A stretch of 64,000 bases of DNA from Euprymna scolopes (taxonomy: Eukaryota): NCBI GenBank assembly GCA_053919585.1, contig CM132793.1; one strand, 5' to 3'. Made by a program: the position numbers and the translations under genes. The notes below the pieces were generated by a model. That model saw only the letters and a list, made by a program, of their open reading frames with translations. It was not told the DNA's origin and searched no databases. Positions 9,237 through 56,639 of the stretch are shown here, one piece after another; position 1 is the first letter of the stretch; each line of letters opens with the position of its first letter.

Positions 9237-11093
9237 ATGACTGAAAAGAAAAGAAAACTTGATCATCGCCCATTTCAAGACAATTGGACAATAGAATATG
9301 GATTTGTGGAACAAAAGGATCGTGCTGTTTGTGCTTTCTGTTGCGAAAGTGTTGTGTGTCGCACATCTAGTGTACAAAGGCACTTTCAAACCAAACATCA
9401 ATCTAAGTTTAAAACTTCAGAAGAAAAAGGTGAAGCCATCAAAAAAGCTATTTCTGGTTTCAAAAAACAAACTGTTATTTTGATCCAAGCTGTTGGAATG
9501 AAGAGTAAAGCTACTGAATGTAGTTACAAAATAGCCCAGTGTGTGGCTTTAAATGGTAAACCTTTTACAGATGGTGAATACATCAAAGAAGCTTTTTTGA
9601 GTGGTGCTGAAGTTTTGTTTCGTGATTTAAAAAATAAGGACATTATACTCTCTCGAATTAGAGAAATACCAGTCTCTGCAAGATCAGTTGAGAGGCGCAT
9701 ATCTGACTTGGCTGAAAATGTGACAACTAAGCAAACAACTGGATTAAAGCAATCCCTTGTATTTAGTGTCGCTCTTGATGAAAGCACCGATGTAAACGAT
9801 GCGTCTCGCCTAGCAGTGGTTGCAAGATATCTCGAGAATAATCACATTTATGAGGAGTTGTGTTGTTTATTACCCCTTCATGATACAACCAAAGCAGAAG
9901 ATATTTTGTGTGCATTTACTGGTTATTTTTCTAAACAAGACATTAACTTGAAGAAATTATTCTGCGTAACAACCGATGGTGCTGCTGCAATGGTTGGCAA
10001 GAAGAAAGGATTTGTAAAACTTCTGGAAAATCATGTTGGACGCAAACTGTTAAGTTTTCATTGTATTATACATCAGGAGGGCTTATGTGCAAAGACCTCG
10101 TCTTTGGATTTGGTCTCTGTGATGAAAACTGTTGTTGAGATAATCAACTTTCTTATTTCTCGCTCTTCATTGGTTCACAGGCAATTCAAATCGCTTCTAC
10201 AAGAAGTTGAGTGTGAATATGGAGATCTTCTGTTATACAACAATGTTCGCTGGCTTAGTCGAGGCAAAGTTTTAGCTAGATTTGTTTGTTGTCTTGAGGC
10301 TATTAAGATGTTTCTTGATGAAAAACAGAAACGATTCCCTCAGCTGAATGATGAAAGCTGGTTGTTGAAGTTGATGTTTATGACCGACATAAACACACAT
10401 TTGAATGAGCTTAATTTGAAATTACAAGGACAGGGACAAACAGTCCTTGATCTTTTCAGCTATTGGAAAGCGTTTACAATGAAACTTGACATTTTTACCC
10501 GTGACATCAACATCAAAGCATTTAAGTACTTTCCAAATGTGAAAAATCATGCAAATCAATTCGAAGTGAACACAGATGAGCTTCAGGAGTACGTGAAAGC
10601 ACTCAAAGCAGAATTCGAAAAACGAAGCCAGGACTTCTACATTCATGGATCCTTATTTTCATATCTGATTAAGCCCGACATGCTTGATTTGACAAATGCC
10701 CAACTGGAACTTTTTAGCTGGATGGACATTGATGATTTTGAAATGCAACAGATTGAATTTAGGTCTTCAGAAATATGGACATTAAAATTTGCTGAACTAA
10801 GAAAGTCTCTGGAAGATGAAAATTTTGAAAAGTCTGGTGCTATTCTGAACTGTTGGATCTCCCTCCCAAGCTCATTCATCTGTTTGAAGAAAATTGCTTT
10901 TGCTCTTCTCTCAGCTTTTGGTTCAACTTATTCTTGTGAGCAAATTTTCTCTCACATGAAAGCAGTGTTGTCTCCACGTCGAAGTCGTCTAACACCTGAA
11001 CATTCAGAAAACTGTGTTAAGCTCAAAGTTACAAAGTATGTTCCCGACATTGAGGAATTGGCAAAGACCATGCAAGGACAAGGGTCCCATTAA
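9237..11093 (+). CDS. Intact hAT transposase, 618 aa (GTF2IRD2/EPM2AIP1/SPIN-like)
   Basis: N-terminal NLS KKRK, BED finger CAFC...HFQTKH, catalytic D (ALDESTD), D (TTDGA), CxxH (HCIIHQ), RWLSRG and E (YSCEQIFS), plus the C-terminal dimerisation region; no stops. Confidence 0.95.
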   Translation: MTEKKRKLDHRPFQDNWTIEYGFVEQKDRAVCAFCCESVVCRTSSVQRHFQTKHQSKFKTSEEKGEAIKKAISGFKKQTVILIQAVGMKSKATECSYKIAQCVALNGKPFTDGEYIKEAFLSGAEVLFRDLKNKDIILSRIREIPVSARSVERRISDLAENVTTKQTTGLKQSLVFSVALDESTDVNDASRLAVVARYLENNHIYEELCCLLPLHDTTKAEDILCAFTGYFSKQDINLKKLFCVTTDGAAAMVGKKKGFVKLLENHVGRKLLSFHCIIHQEGLCAKTSSLDLVSVMKTVVEIINFLISRSSLVHRQFKSLLQEVECEYGDLLLYNNVRWLSRGKVLARFVCCLEAIKMFLDEKQKRFPQLNDESWLLKLMFMTDINTHLNELNLKLQGQGQTVLDLFSYWKAFTMKLDIFTRDINIKAFKYFPNVKNHANQFEVNTDELQEYVKALKAEFEKRSQDFYIHGSLFSYLIKPDMLDLTNAQLELFSWMDIDDFEMQQIEFRSSEIWTLKFAELRKSLEDENFEKSGAILNCWISLPSSFICLKKIAFALLSAFGSTYSCEQIFSHMKAVLSPRRSRLTPEHSENCVKLKVTKYVPDIEELAKTMQGQGSH

Positions 11094-52301: not shown

Positions 52302-53660
52302 GGTGTTGTGATGATAACTCCCATCCACCTGGTCCCTCGATTGCGGATAGAGGGAGTGACCTCTAGTTGAGAGGGCTAAGCTGCGAGTGCATTGACCCAG
52401 ATTAAAATCACGAATACCCCTTTCACAAGGCGTAACACTCGGTAGCCTCTCCAAATAGGGTTCCGCTCTAAACTCGCGTGGCAGGTAGGCGACAAGGCGG
52501 TACGAAAAAGATGTGATTGTGTACCGACAACCTGCTGCAGGATGCCTTCCTAAACCTGCATGTGAAGCACACCTTTGTAGCCACAAATGGTGACATCTGA
52601 AGTGTGTGCGACACGAAGTTGCATCTCCTGGATCACCTAAAACAGATTTTAGCTTACGATACAGTGTAGATCTACGAGTCCCCGATCACCCTAATTCTAG
52701 CTATTTGTTTTCTTTTTTTTGTTGTAAACAATGCCCTGTGGCGACAAAGCAAGGGTGATGAGGGAAGGTTTGGCAAGCTGATAGCTGTTGTCTCTTATAT
52801 ACAGTCTGCGACAGATGTGTGATGTTCGCACGCGGGAGAAAAGATGGCGAATCTGGTAATGAGGTCCTGCAGGCCTTTTATTTTAGGACGTCCACTGCCG
52901 CTCTTACTATAAAACGCGCTATAGAAGCTGGGCAAAACATTGGACACCAATCCAAACACCTGGCTGGTATACCGCAATCAGCAGGTGACCAATATTGCAG
53001 TACAAAATCAGAGCAACGAAGATGATCATGTGACCATGAAACCTGGCACATAGAAGGTAAGAATCCGCCTTGATCTTCAAAATTGACATCGACTTAAAAG
53101 GAGCACGGCACCCGTCTACGACGAATTTGCCCTGTTTTCAATTGTCAACGCGAAATTAAGTGAGACAAGACTCTCAAACGAGTGAGGAATAAATAAACTT
53201 GAGGTCAGTTATTCAATCTTCTGGCGAGCGAAACCTGTTTTGAACGCCGGATTCATGGCCTGATTTTGCCGGTTAAAACACCAGTCGTGCGAAAACAAAA
53301 TCTGCTGCCCAAAGGAGTAAGTAGACGACTAATGAAACTACGTATTCCTCTTCCGAAGAACAACTTCCTACCCCTCGTATCGGCATACTTGCCGAATCTT
53401 GATTTAGAAGACGCAGAGAAGGAAGAGTTCTAACAACAAAATGAGCTTATCTCTTCCACTTCCTCAAAAGATAAATTACTCACACTCAGATATTTAATGC
53501 CCATGTGGGGAAGGACAGCATAGGAGCCTTTTAATGAAAATAGTGGTCATTAAAAATGTAATAACAATAAACTGTGCCTTCTCGACTTTTGTGCAGAGCA
53601 TGACCTTCTCATTACAAATACCATCCTTTAACTCCCTATGAGAAAAAAGACCACCTGAAA
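52300..53660 (+). mobile_element. RTE (BovB-like) LINE 5' UTR and APE endonuclease remnant, 3'-truncated
   Basis: Degenerate MKxGTWNVR (~53036), LSETRL (~53156), MKLRIPL...VSAY (53332ff), xFNAHVG, LDFCAEHDLLITNT and KTTW; RTE-type 5' UTR motif CCCTCGATTGCGGATAGAGGG...AGCTGCGA. Confidence 0.8.
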
Positions 53661-54075
53661 TCAAACCCTGTATAGTTTATATATGCAGCCATCAAATTTT
53701 ATTGACCTAATCAGATGTATATTTATCAGGTTTCGTGATATTCCATGCGAATAACAGTGTAAGCAGGGATCCCATTTTATCCCGTCCCATAGAAAGATAT
53801 AATCGAGCCTTACAGAAGTAATTAAATTGTGTTTATCAAACTACTGAATAGGATCAATCGGTCATTTTTCCGGACATGTTCACTAAACACAATGGAATTA
53901 AACCTATTTCATTTTGCTGGTTGGTTACAATTATATCCAGCATATTCCACACAATAAAACATATTAAACACTAACGGCTACTTGTGGTATCACTTTTTAA
54001 TTACAATCTCGATTACCGATTATCCACTTTATAAAATAAACTCGATATAAAAAATAAAAGTTTTCACCCAACTAC

Positions 54076-54321
54076 ACCCCTCCATAGCCTTGAGCCCCTA
54101 AGGAGCATAGGCCATCTACAACTTTGTTGATGCTTTTCTAGCGACTGGGTTATTTTTTTACGGGGTGAAGTTGCTGGCCCAACGCCCAACCTTTCCAGAA
54201 GGTACATACAGCGCCTAGTTTTCCCAAGTGGTCACGCATCTGATACTGGCCAGGCTCAACGTTGCTTAACTTCGGTTATCTGGCGAGAACCGATGTGTTA
54301 ACTTGATGATGCCGTATAGTT
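54076..54321 (-). mobile_element. 5S rRNA-derived SINE (SINE3) with bipartite RTE-derived body and tail
   Basis: Minus strand 54319-54204 aligns along its length with metazoan 5S rRNA (CGGTTCTCGCCAGATAACCGAAGTTAAGCAACG...AGTA...GATGCGTGACCACTTGGGAA...GCTGTA). Next come GGTTGGGCGTTGGGCCAGCAACTTCACCCCGTAAAAAA (RTE 5'-UTR motif) and GATGGCCTATGCTCC (RTE 3'-end motif). Candidate TSD AACTAC (54070-75, 54322-27). Confidence 0.8.
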
Positions 54322-56639
54322 AACTACGTTTAGTAAAATAATTAGTATATAAAATTGGTAAATATTAAAATTAATCACACAAACGTTTAAAACACAACAC
54401 GAAATATTAAAAAATACTATAGCAAAATGTTTAAAGTAAAGAAAACACAAAATACACCGCAAGTACAGAATATTAAAGACCTCAATATGATAAAATAAAA
54501 CAATCCAATCTATTTCTTGCAATTTACAAAAATTTGAAAGAATCATAGCGCCTTTGATATTTCCCTTTGGTTTTGTGCGATACATTGCTTGTAGATTATA
54601 GATTTCCATAGCATGCGTATTTCGCTTCCAGCAAATAAGTGTCTGCTGTTCAGCGATTTAATGTATGTCACTCTACTATTTGCTGTGTCTTAGGCATTTA
54701 ATAAAATGCTTATGCAACGTAGGGTTATATCGGCCGTACGTTTAATAAGTTTTCTGCGTTTCTGAGGTGTCCTGTTTATAGCTTTCTGCAGTAAGCAGGC
54801 GATATCTGAGGGTAATTTTTCATGTAATAACGGCTCGGATGAAAACTTTTCATATATATTTTGTTACCCTGGAAATAATGTTATGACAGGCATACATTTG
54901 GTTCATTCTGTTTATAATATAGGTGCGAGAGCATTTTCAATAACATCTGGCATATTTTAGTTAACATACATTATAATCTCATTAGTTATAGCAATGTATA
55001 AATTTCAGCAAGCATATAAAACAATAATGGCATTAATAATAACACTCATAATAATACCATAAATAATATTAATTTTGATTGTTAGCGACCAATCATTGGT
55101 ATGTATCTTCATTTATACTACTACTAATACTACTACTACTAATAATAATAATAATAATTATAATAATAATAATAGCTTTTAGAATACTAGACAACGTACT
55201 AAGACGATTCTAAGGGAAGTGAAGTATATAAAACGCATTATATAATGTTCGATTTTCTAACACTGCAATACGCAGTTATGGAGCCAGCATTGGTAAAACC
55301 GCTCATAATACTACTAATATTAAATAGACCAAAGGGGAAAGAGTGTCAGACTCTTCCAGGACTAAAGTATACTGATAGTTGAATCCCATGGAAGCTATTA
55401 TCCCTTGAATTCATGATAAGCCCAGGAACTGCATCAGTGAAACCTCAATTTAAACAGCCCTCTTAGAAACCCCAAACGATCATGTAATAGTAACCACAGG
55501 AGTTAAAAACACTTAAACTCTGAGAAAAATTTTCCCTCACTCTTATCCAAGGATATCTATCTTTTATAAACAGTGATCGATAACTTTGAATAACACTTAT
55601 GATACGTTCATATAAGTAATTCAGAACCCCTAATCATAATACCAAGCGCAATTTCTGCGAGAAACCTTTATTTTCATATCATCACATCCACAGAAGAAAA
55701 TAGAGTGGAGCTGCTTTACAACTAATTATCCCGTAAGTCTTCAAGCCCAGACTAAAATAAATGTGTGATGAATATTACACTTGATTATCTAATGCTTACC
55801 AGCAATTTCTATTCTTTCCATATGTTTGTAATTTTCAAACTGTACCTCTATTTAGCACATCATTCTAAATGGTGCTATTTGGTCTTTTGAAATAGCGACG
55901 TATTACTGAAAATAGGAGTTATAGAGGTTTTAATTTGTTACAATTGCGGCCGGTCTCCCGTGCTCAGGTCAAACAACTGACCTCTGACTTTCTTTGGAAA
56001 CTGTGGCTCGTGGTATCTAGTCATCTGGGAGACCTCTACATTAATTATCTACGTTTCTGTGTAGAATTCTGTTGAATGCAAAAGGAGAAACTTGCATGAG
56101 TACGAAAGAAAGACAGACGAATTAGGGTAATATCTACTAAAAATTAATTTCACGAAAGTTACCGTTCTTTTTTTCACATACATACAACGTTCACTTATTA
56201 ACACATTTTAAGTACTCGAATCGCTTTTCTTCGTCACTGGATGGTTGGTCGAGATAGCGCGGAGGGGATCAGGCGTCAGGAGCTATTTTCTTCGGAGATT
56301 CGGCGCAGGATCTGTCTGTTTTCGAGCGGGTATTGGCTTTTAGAGTAAGATCACAGGTTGGGGTGGACAATCTACCCAATCAATCATCGATACGTTTCCC
56401 GGGGAATTTCCATATACATTTGCGTGCGTGAAGTTCAGCAATAGTTTAGAGTTTTATAATCTGATACCAAAATGAAATCATCTTCACATAACCTGGGAGG
56501 GCAACCCTTGTCAATTGACAACTAAGAACACCTGGGCCGGTGTTCCTCAGGCCAAAGGAATTCCATTGTCCTTTATTGTAACATTCCCTGTCATATTGTT
56601 GTCAAACAAAAATATATACCTGGCTTTGACAATAAAACA

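What the first reader, a model, noticed from the sequence alone, without database searches (positions are those of the whole stretch)
54076..54321. 5S rRNA-headed SINE built on a bipartite RTE scaffold
Seen: a full-length degenerate 5S rRNA (with Pol III A/IE/C box region) fused directly to a motif characteristic of RTE 5' UTRs and then an RTE-type 3' end, in ~245 bp with a candidate 6-bp TSD. Known: SINE3 elements are rare compared with tRNA SINEs, and RTE-mobilised SINEs typically carry both a 5'-UTR piece and the 3' tail of the partner. In some RTEs this UTR motif directly follows a twister ribozyme. Inference: probably an undescribed invertebrate SINE3 family in which a 5S head replaced the RTE 5' end. 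An RTE remnant lies 0.5-2 kb away.
Basis: partly seen in the sequence, partly recalled or inferred. Interest (0 to 1): 0.7.

Follow-up and report, generated by a model that had tools for sequence, protein, structure and literature searches.

The report
5S rRNA-headed SINE, old copy
This is a decayed copy of a real short jumping element whose front end is copied from the 5S ribosomal RNA gene. It belongs to a family of at least 4,200 copies in a large mollusc genome. It is a new example of a known kind, and its claimed construction from two pieces of an RTE element is not supported.

Summary
On the minus strand (54317→54082) lies a 236-bp element: a full-length diverged 5S rRNA head (Rfam 53 bits; 83% identical to the host 5S gene; box A/IE/C region kept) joined to a 116-bp body with two 3' hairpins, ending in GGCTATGG and a decayed tail.

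It is not a chance junction. The head/body junction occurs 4,232 times genome-wide (control 0). 49 of 68 distinct full copies have 10–16-bp TSDs (control 0). Copies end in (ATGG)n, and related species share the family. It is one of several families built on one 5S head lineage (about 21,500 heads; about 80,000 5S-like heads in all).

An RTE partner is inferred, not shown. Insertion sites show the published RTE signature (T-stretch at P-12..-10, Y|A nick). The tail type matches RTE-1_OL and Rex3, and intact RTE families are abundant. No LINE sharing the tail was found.

The "RTE 5'-UTR motif", the "bipartite scaffold" and the twister remark found no support. The neighbouring RTE-like remnant is unrelated to the element.

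5S+RTE SINEs are already known (HaSE3, CoeSINE5, SINE-1_Pmo). The scan has noted 5S SINEs in this genome 38 times before.

The parts
54082..54317 (-). Whole SINE copy (236 bp), 90.6% identical to the 234-bp family consensus; an old, decayed copy
   Evidence: blastn of the consensus against the window; global alignment; 30-copy alignment that defines both ends
54203..54319 (-). 5S rRNA-derived head, full length (model positions 1-120)
   Evidence: Rfam RF00001 at 53.4 bits, E 2.5e-08. The family consensus is 83% identical to the host 5S gene over 115 nt. A near-consensus copy scores 56 bits against about 115 for the true genes
54259..54272 (-). Box A-like part of the internal Pol III promoter (identical to the host 5S gene in the family consensus)
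54250..54257 (-). Intermediate-element-like stretch
54221..54242 (-). Box C-like stretch (the consensus differs from host 5S at 2 of 21 positions; this copy has further changes)
54082..54202 (-). Non-5S body of unknown origin, shared by the family; no match to any accessible RTE 5' UTR or 3' end
54113..54132 (-). 3' hairpin 1 (7-bp stem in the consensus; one stem mismatch in this copy)
54094..54106 (-). 3' hairpin 2 (GCCCC/GGGGC stem in the consensus, one change in this copy). Subfamilies keep the stem while the loop differs
54076..54089 (-). Terminal GGCTATGG plus a decayed remnant of the (ATGG)n tail
54322..54327 (-). Candidate 5' TSD (GTAGTT), 4 nt from the element; not significant alone
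54070..54075 (-). Candidate 3' TSD (GTAGTT)
53036..53745 (+). Bystander: decayed LINE remnant covering only the N-terminal endonuclease domain. It is RTE-like (38-42% identity to RTE-type ORFs; named relatives are 'craniofacial development protein 2-like') and is not related to the SINE

Best explanation
The element is an old, inert copy of a 5S rRNA-derived SINE (SINE3 type) family of a large mollusc genome.

Shown: the family consensus is 234 bp. Positions 1-118 are a diverged full-length 5S rRNA that keeps the box A / IE / box C region. Positions 119-234 are a body of unknown origin with two hairpins near the 3' end. Copies end in GGCTATGG followed by 0-3 ATGG units. The head/body junction occurs at least 4,232 times, dispersed on both strands. 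Copies carry individual target-site duplications of about 11-15 bp, and 5'-truncated copies exist.

[quoted passage not shown] A LINE reverse transcriptase recognises the 3' hairpin and repeat end and copies the RNA into a nicked target by target-primed reverse transcription.

The partner is most likely (about 60%) an RTE-clade LINE. The reasons are the insertion signature (T-rich stretch 10-12 nt upstream of a pyrimidine|A nick), the TSD length, the (ATGG)n tail, and the many intact RTE elements in the genome. The partner's sequence was not found, so this step is not shown.

The family is one of several that share one 5S head lineage but carry different bodies and tails.
For: 5S head.
Repetition of the whole unit: 40 of 40 scored hits span head and body at 85-89% identity.
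Junction 28-mer: 2117+2115 hits, control 0.
Sharp ends, variable flanks and the (ATGG)n tail.
TSDs: 49 of 68 distinct copies have 10 bp or more, against 0 in the mismatched-flank control; mode 12-13.
DNA contigs of a sequencing run skip 257-267 nt at the L003 copy, roughly the size of element plus TSD. This suggests copies of the surrounding repeat that lack the SINE.
Best copies are 95-98% identical to the consensus, 5'-truncated copies exist, and the window copy is 90.6%.
The family's 31-mers are held by runs of at least 7 organism labels in 10 studies, some labelled mollusc metagenome.
RTE-type signature: T is 65% at P-12 and P-11 (background 35%, p=3e-5). G+C is about 6-8% at P-13..-11. 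P1 is A in 65% and C in 0%. P-1 is a pyrimidine in 86%. This matches Nishiyama and Ohshima 2018 (PMC6007223). The same paper lists RTE-1_OL with an (ATGG)n tail, and Rex3 ends in (GATG)n (PMC6274825).
Three intact RTE-clade ORF families and about 209,000 first-look candidates are in the genome.
Sister families on the same head.
Against: No LINE with this 3' end was found. All of the best tail and middle hits lie inside SINE copies. No body segment is more frequent than the junction. None of the listed intact RTE copies has the exact tail 24-mer next to its ORF end. No other (ATGG)n-tailed element end occurs in about 350 kb of host DNA.
The body matches no accessible RTE UTR.
PolyA RNA-seq covers the element equally in both orientations with no defined starts, so Pol III transcription of the family is not shown.
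The insertion signature rests on 48 copies chosen as best matches.
Observed TSDs (median 13) are slightly longer than the published RTE mode of 10-12.
Confidence: 0.8

Rival explanations
1. It is the same SINE3 family, but it is mobilised by a LINE outside the RTE clade (for example CR1, L2, Rex1 or another clade with microsatellite tails). The RTE-like insertion signature would then be coincidental or shared with that clade.
For: No RTE with this tail was found. The body has no similarity to any RTE UTR tested. Median TSD is 13 bp, a little above the published RTE mode (PMC6007223). Other LINE clades are abundant in the host sample.
Against: A remote T-stretch near P-10 is reported as specific to RTE-related retroposons (PMC6007223) and is clear here. 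The only abundant non-RTE LINE seen in the sample ends in an A-rich tail unrelated to the SINE. (ATGG)n tails are documented for RTE-clade LINEs.
Confidence: 0.3
2. One reading: the body is a bipartite RTE scaffold (an RTE 5'-UTR motif plus an RTE 3' end) onto which a 5S head was grafted in place of the RTE 5' end, as in CoeSINE5 or SINE-1_Pmo.
For: Such SINEs exist, including 5S-headed ones, and cephalopod Ceph-SINEs carry an RTE 5'-UTR-derived half-domain (PMC5786205). The host has short bipartite RTE-derived elements (L075:627-850). The insertion signature points to RTE machinery.
Against: SINE positions 119-180 give only shuffle-level scores against the 5' UTRs of four foreign RTE families, a host RTE-derived 5' end and the neighbouring remnant. 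A profile of the non-coding block conserved among RTE 5' UTRs finds nothing in the SINE. No body segment is over-represented as a LINE-shared piece would be.
Confidence: 0.15
3. A chance juxtaposition: a single 5S pseudogene that happens to lie next to an RTE fragment.
For: An RTE-like remnant lies 340-1,050 bp away. The window copy's own TSD is weak.
Against: The same junction occurs 4,232 times with 0 in the control. Family-wide TSDs are present. The remnant shares no sequence with the element.
Confidence: 0.01

Closest known systems
HaSE3 (Helicoverpa armigera; Wang et al. 2012, PMC3272025)
   Same: An invertebrate SINE with a 5S rRNA-derived head that keeps boxes A, IE and C, a body of unclear origin and a microsatellite tail. 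Its partner is assigned to the RTE clade, and it is shared among related species.
   Different: HaSE3's 3' end was shown to match its partner HaRTE1, and its body and tail are shared with a tRNA SINE (HaSE1). Here no partner and no tRNA-headed twin was found. The tail is (TGA)n there and (ATGG)n here. Copy number is far higher here.
CoeSINE5 (coelacanth) and SINE-1_Pmo (python), 5S-headed SINEs with RTE 5'-UTR and 3'-UTR parts (Kojima 2018, PMC5786205)
   Same: A 5S head followed by a short body, of similar size (about 240 bp for SINE-1_Pmo).
   Different: In those families both body parts align to known RTE UTRs. Here neither part aligns to any RTE I could test, so the bipartite origin is not established.
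SINE3 of zebrafish (Kapitonov and Jurka 2003, as cited in PMC5786205)
   Same: The founding class: a 5S-derived head with an internal Pol III promoter, LINE-dependent, high copy number.
   Different: From my own knowledge, not tested here: zebrafish SINE3 is paired with a CR1-type LINE. It is a vertebrate element with an unrelated body.
Ceph-SINEs of squids and cuttlefish (Akasaki et al. 2010, as discussed in PMC5786205)
   Same: SINEs of cephalopod molluscs thought to use RTE. Their conserved domain starts with a CCTTGGG-type motif, and the present body begins with a similar short string (CCTTCTGGGAAGG).
   Different: Ceph-SINEs have tRNA-derived heads. The similarity here is about 11 nt with an indel and was not testable, because no Ceph-SINE sequence was at hand.

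Membership tests
SINE3 (5S rRNA-derived SINE) | 5' head derived from 5S rRNA | tested here: met
   Rfam 5S_rRNA at 53.4 bits (window copy) and 56.1 bits (near-consensus copy), full model length; 83% identity to the host 5S gene
SINE3 (5S rRNA-derived SINE) | Internal Pol III promoter region (box A, IE, box C) retained | tested here: met
   Consensus against host 5S: box A-like 14/14, IE-like 8/8, box C-like 19/21 identical. This is sequence only; promoter activity was not tested
SINE3 (5S rRNA-derived SINE) | Short, non-coding, dispersed, high copy number | tested here: met
   234-bp consensus; 4,232 junction hits on both strands of all chromosomes, control 0
SINE3 (5S rRNA-derived SINE) | Target-site duplications that differ between copies | tested here: met
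   49 of 68 copies with 10 bp or more against 0 of 68 in the control
SINE3 (5S rRNA-derived SINE) | 3' end shared with an autonomous partner LINE | tested here: inconclusive
   No LINE with this end was found in the best genome hits or in 350 kb of host DNA.
SINE3 (5S rRNA-derived SINE) | Transcribed by Pol III as a discrete RNA | tested here: inconclusive
   PolyA RNA-seq shows both orientations equally and no defined starts or ends. This library type is unsuited to the question
RTE-mobilised SINE | Insertion signature: T-stretch about 10 nt upstream of the first TSD base (PMC6007223) | tested here: met
   T is 65/65/52% at P-12/-11/-10 against 35% background; G+C about 6-8% at P-13..-11; p about 1e-5; n=48
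RTE-mobilised SINE | TSDs mostly 7-15 bp, most often 10-12 | tested here: met
   Range 10-16 (one of 20), mode 12-13, median 13. Within range, with the mode 1-2 bp higher
RTE-mobilised SINE | Microsatellite-type 3' tail of a kind used by RTE LINEs | tested here: met
   (ATGG)0-3 after GGCTATGG. RTE-1_OL has (ATGG)n and Rex3 has (GATG)n
RTE-mobilised SINE | 3'-terminal sequence identity with an RTE LINE of the same genome | not testable with these tools
   Intact RTE copies were located, but their DNA could not be fetched, and records of this genome are withheld from the contig look-up
Bipartite RTE-scaffold SINE (AfroSINE / Mar1 / CoeSINE5 type) | Middle segment homologous to an RTE 5' UTR | tested here: inconclusive
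   No similarity to the 5' UTRs of four foreign RTE families, to a profile of their conserved block, or to a host RTE-derived 5' end. The host's full-length RTE 5' UTRs were not readable
Ceph-SINE | tRNA-derived head | tested here: not met
   The head is 5S rRNA

The most novel reading that the evidence does not exclude
5S rRNA-headed SINEs, and not tRNA SINEs, form a large and so far overlooked SINE population in this 5.9-Gb mollusc genome: about 80,000 heads in several families, made by repeated swapping of bodies and tails on one diverged 5S head lineage. If the host is a decapodiform cephalopod, as its size and its 46 or more chromosome-scale contigs suggest, this contradicts published statements that such genomes contain almost no SINEs. 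It would also be the first mollusc SINE3 radiation described.
Probability: 0.4. Interest if true: 0.5.

Novelty: new member of a known kind. Interest (0 to 1): 0.3.

Why it matters
Taken alone, the element is an ordinary dead SINE copy. The family matters modestly.

- It shows that a mollusc genome carries tens of thousands of 5S-derived SINEs in several families. Mollusc SINE surveys list only tRNA-derived superfamilies (PMC4758252, PMC10294476), and cephalopod genome papers report decapodiform genomes as nearly SINE-free (PMC8967140, PMC13218726). That points to an annotation gap, since automatic pipelines leave such repeats unclassified.
- Several families share one head but differ in body and tail. 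That makes this a good system for studying how SINEs are assembled.
- The 5S-LINE chimera on C5 shows that 5S sequence and LINE sequence do get joined in this genome.
- For repeat annotation, the consensus and the subfamily structure would improve masking and gene models.

Tried and rejected
1. Partner LINE through genome searches with only the tail (66 nt) or only the middle (67 nt): every best hit lay inside a complete SINE.
From then on only coordinates and counts were available.
3. The neighbouring RTE-like remnant as partner: no similarity beyond shuffles.
4. The abundant CR1/Jockey-like LINE in the sample: it has an A-rich tail unrelated to the SINE.
5. Scan of 350 kb of host DNA for other (ATGG)n-tailed element ends: none.
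6. Metagenome-contig scan for the 3' hairpin: two chance 24-nt matches in GC-rich unrelated contigs.
7. Protein route and contig look-ups: these gave only foreign RTEs. L102 comes from a human-gut metagenome record and was left unused.
8. Resemblance of 3' hairpin 1 to the 3'-UTR hairpin of the foreign RTEs: by eye (3' ends printed) the architecture looks different (outer GTC/GAC stem, bulge and a following GAAC there; a plain 7-bp stem here), so I built no model.
9. Whole-element and body folding: not better than shuffles (z -1.0 and -0.6).
10. Host clade from the window's hAT transposase: nearest named relatives are arthropods, so it is uninformative.
11. Rfam for twister or HDV-like ribozymes in the foreign RTE loci, window 52-55 kb and L075: none.
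12. Earlier notes of the scan: they repeat the same reading and none located a partner.

Full report
**What is there**

Rfam finds one family above threshold in the whole 64-kb window: 5S_rRNA at 54319-54203 on the minus strand (53.4 bits, gathering score 38, full model length). The finding must therefore be read on the minus strand. In that orientation the 5S-like head is followed directly by about 116 nt of unrelated sequence that ends in GGCTATGG at 54082. The box A-like, IE-like and box C-like stretches of the 5S internal promoter lie at 54272-54259, 54257-54250 and 54242-54221.

**Chance junction or family?**

A search of the window's own genome (5.9 Gb, 925 contigs) with the whole unit gave 4,467 first-look candidates. 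All 40 scored hits spanned both head and body at 85-89% identity.

Thirty copies aligned with their flanks show a sharp common 5' end (GTACGGCAC...), a common 3' end (...GGCTATGG) followed by ATGG repeats, and unrelated flanks. A 234-bp majority consensus was made for internal use. The best copies are 95-98% identical to it and the window copy is 90.6%. 5'-truncated copies that start inside the head also occur.

A 28-nt pattern across the head/body junction occurs 2,117 + 2,115 times with up to 2 mismatches. The reversed-pattern control gives 0.

**Relation to the host 5S gene**

The genome has a true 5S rDNA array on C18 (about 115 bits per gene).

- The SINE consensus head is 83% identical to the host gene over 115 nt.
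- Box A-like and IE-like stretches are identical; the box C-like stretch differs at 2 of 21 positions.
- A near-consensus copy scores only 56 bits, so the master head was already a diverged 5S.
- By my reading of the consensus printed, there is no run of four T in the sense strand, so a Pol III transcript could run through the element.

**Retroposition hallmarks**

Among 68 distinct full-length copies, 49 have a TSD of 10 bp or more. None does when 5' and 3' flanks of different copies are paired as a control. After trimming, TSDs are 10-16 bp (one of 20), with mode 12-13 and median 13. Tails are 0-3 ATGG units, often ending in a partial unit.

DNA contigs of a sequencing run skip 257-267 nt at one copy (L003). 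That is roughly the size of element plus TSD, and it suggests copies of the surrounding repeat that lack the SINE.

The window copy's own 6-bp TSD candidate (GTAGTT) sits 4 nt from the 5' end and is not significant alone.

**The wider population**

Whole-genome counts with up to 2 mismatches:

| Pattern | Hits | Control |
|---|---|---|
| Box A core, 17-mer | 82,840 | 382 |
| This family's head variant, 31-mer | 21,543 | 0 |
| Head/body junction, 28-mer | 4,232 | 0 |
| Mid-body 28-mer (two CpGs, many decayed) | 1,678 | 0 |
| Exact terminal 24-mer | 507 | 0 |

- The terminal region varies between subfamilies: the loop is TTA or TCCA on a kept GCCCC/GGGGC stem, and there are internal deletions.
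- Other elements in the fetched loci share only the head and carry different bodies.
- Read and contig depth on the head is about 20 times that on the body, and loose ends mark divergence exactly at the head/body junction.
- The window's family is therefore one of several built on one 5S head lineage.
- Its 31-mers are held by runs of at least seven organism labels in ten studies, some labelled mollusc or invertebrate metagenome.

**Which LINE moves it?**

No LINE with this 3' end was found:

- The best tail-only and middle-only hits all lie in complete SINEs.
- No body segment is more frequent than the junction.
- No other (ATGG)n-tailed end occurs in about 350 kb of host DNA.
- The abundant CR1/Jockey-like LINE in that sample has an unrelated A-rich tail.
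The contig look-up may withhold records of this genome.

Indirect evidence favours the RTE clade:

- The 5' flanks show T at 65/65/52% at P-12, P-11 and P-10 (background 35%), G+C of about 6-8% at P-13 to P-11, A at P1 in 65% (C never), and a pyrimidine at P-1 in 86%. Each has p of about 1e-5.
- A T-stretch about ten nucleotides upstream of the first TSD base is the signature reported for RTE-related retroposons, with RTE TSDs mostly 7-15 bp (PMC6007223).
- The same paper lists RTE-1_OL of medaka with an (ATGG)n tail. Rex3, also of the RTE clade, ends in (GATG)n (PMC6274825).
- The genome holds three RTE-clade families with intact single ORFs (open frames of 1098, 1118 and 1095 aa, matching residues 4-1056 of an endonuclease + RT query) and about 209,000 first-look candidates.

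None of the listed intact copies has the exact tail 24-mer beside its ORF end. I put the RTE partner at about 60%.

**The "bipartite RTE scaffold" and the "RTE 5'-UTR motif"**

Bipartite RTE-derived SINE bodies are well documented, including 5S-headed ones (CoeSINE5, SINE-1_Pmo). Cephalopod Ceph-SINEs carry an RTE 5'-UTR-derived half-domain (PMC5786205). Every test I could run on the present body was negative:

- The neighbouring remnant.
- The 5' UTRs and 3' ends of four foreign RTE families (L099-L101, L103, L104, L105).
- A profile of a non-coding block conserved among those 5' UTRs, which finds nothing in the SINE, the window or the 96 host loci.
- A host RTE-derived short element, L075:627-850.

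This does not exclude homology to the host's own RTE UTRs, so the claim stays open but unsupported.

The remark about twister ribozymes also has no support. Rfam finds none in the foreign RTE loci or in window 52-55 kb. Earlier notes on this genome's RTEs describe HDV-like ribozymes (not tested here).

**The RTE remnant nearby**

Frames at about 53036-53745 (+) match residues about 35-234, the endonuclease domain, of RTE-type ORFs at 38-42% identity. Named relatives are "craniofacial development protein 2-like". Pfam does not reach significance on the pieces. The remnant is a bystander.

**Expression**

A polyA RNA-seq run covers the element in both orientations about equally, with no places where molecules begin or end. 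This shows passive inclusion in longer transcripts. It neither shows nor excludes Pol III transcripts.

**Known or new?**

- 5S-headed SINEs with RTE partners are published for an insect (HaSE3, PMC3272025; SINE3-1_TC is cited there), coelacanth and python (PMC5786205).
- In the searchable literature, mollusc SINE surveys list only tRNA-derived superfamilies (PMC4758252, PMC10294476).
- Cephalopod genome papers state that decapodiform genomes have almost no SINEs (PMC8967140, PMC13218726).
That it is a decapodiform cephalopod is my inference from genome size and 46 or more chromosome-scale contigs, and is not shown.
- Repbase, Dfam and SINEBase could not be consulted.
- The scan itself has 38 notes on 5S SINEs in this genome, several with the same reading and none followed up to a partner.

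**Verdict**

This is a real SINE3-type family and a new member of a known kind. The RTE partner is plausible but inferred. The bipartite-scaffold and twister parts are unsupported. The window copy itself is old and inert.

**Housekeeping**

- L102, from a human-gut metagenome record, was not used in any comparison.
- No N stretch was touched.
- The consensus concerns a SINE, not a virus or provirus, and is kept only in the scratch folder.

Noticed in passing
L031:129-1619 (G000:C5, around 158595083-158595201): The best-scoring 5S gene of the genome (119 bits) is solitary on C5 and canonical in sequence. After 6 nt it is fused, on the same strand, to a 5'-truncated GC-rich LINE that starts at the FADD box of the RT domain (weak RVT_1 and zf-RVT hits). 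This looks like a 5S-LINE chimera of the template-switch type, and it shows that 5S and LINE sequences do get joined in this genome.
   Followed up: partly
L075:627-850 (G000:C41, about 24816933-24817156): A short element made of an RTE 5' end joined to a short 3' end with a (GT)n tail. The 5' part is 72% identical over 137 nt to the start of the 5' UTR of a foreign RTE (L104:9-145). It is probably a bipartite non-autonomous RTE derivative of the host. Rfam finds no known ribozyme in it.
   Followed up: partly
L018:2918-3233, L077:2874-3066, L007:740-1100, L009:676-1000, L038:400-767: At least four other 5S-headed elements share the same head lineage but carry unrelated bodies. One (L009) ends in GGCT and ATGG-type repeats. 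Loose ends in sequencing contigs confirm that abundant families diverge exactly at the head/body junction.
   Followed up: partly
whole genome: The SINE-type head 31-mer is markedly strand-biased (11,973 forward against 9,570 reverse), unlike the junction (2,117 against 2,115). The host 5S array should differ from this pattern at 3 positions and so should not count. The excess is unexplained and may reflect a tandemly amplified SINE-derived array.
   Followed up: no
L099:3476-3720, L103:2641-2885, L104:396-519, L105:2196-2440: Four foreign RTE families (45-60% protein identity) share a conserved non-coding block of about 230 nt just upstream of the ORF, not in the ORF frame. It may be the conserved RTE 5'-UTR domain described by Kojima 2018. 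Rfam finds no match.
   Followed up: partly
window 9237-11090 (+): An intact 618-aa hAT-type transposase ORF has an identical protein in a public run assembly. Its nearest named relatives are in a sea spider (65%) and crustaceans (53-56%), not molluscs. This patchy distribution may indicate horizontal transfer. The first stage already flagged this hAT.
   Followed up: no
L025:2356-3237, L015:2422-3240, L041:2658-3053, L080, L088, L052 (3' ends): An abundant CR1/Jockey-like LINE turned up in 6 or more of 96 random 3-kb loci. It has a conserved 3' UTR that ends in ...GTGAAAAT plus an A-rich tail.
   Followed up: partly
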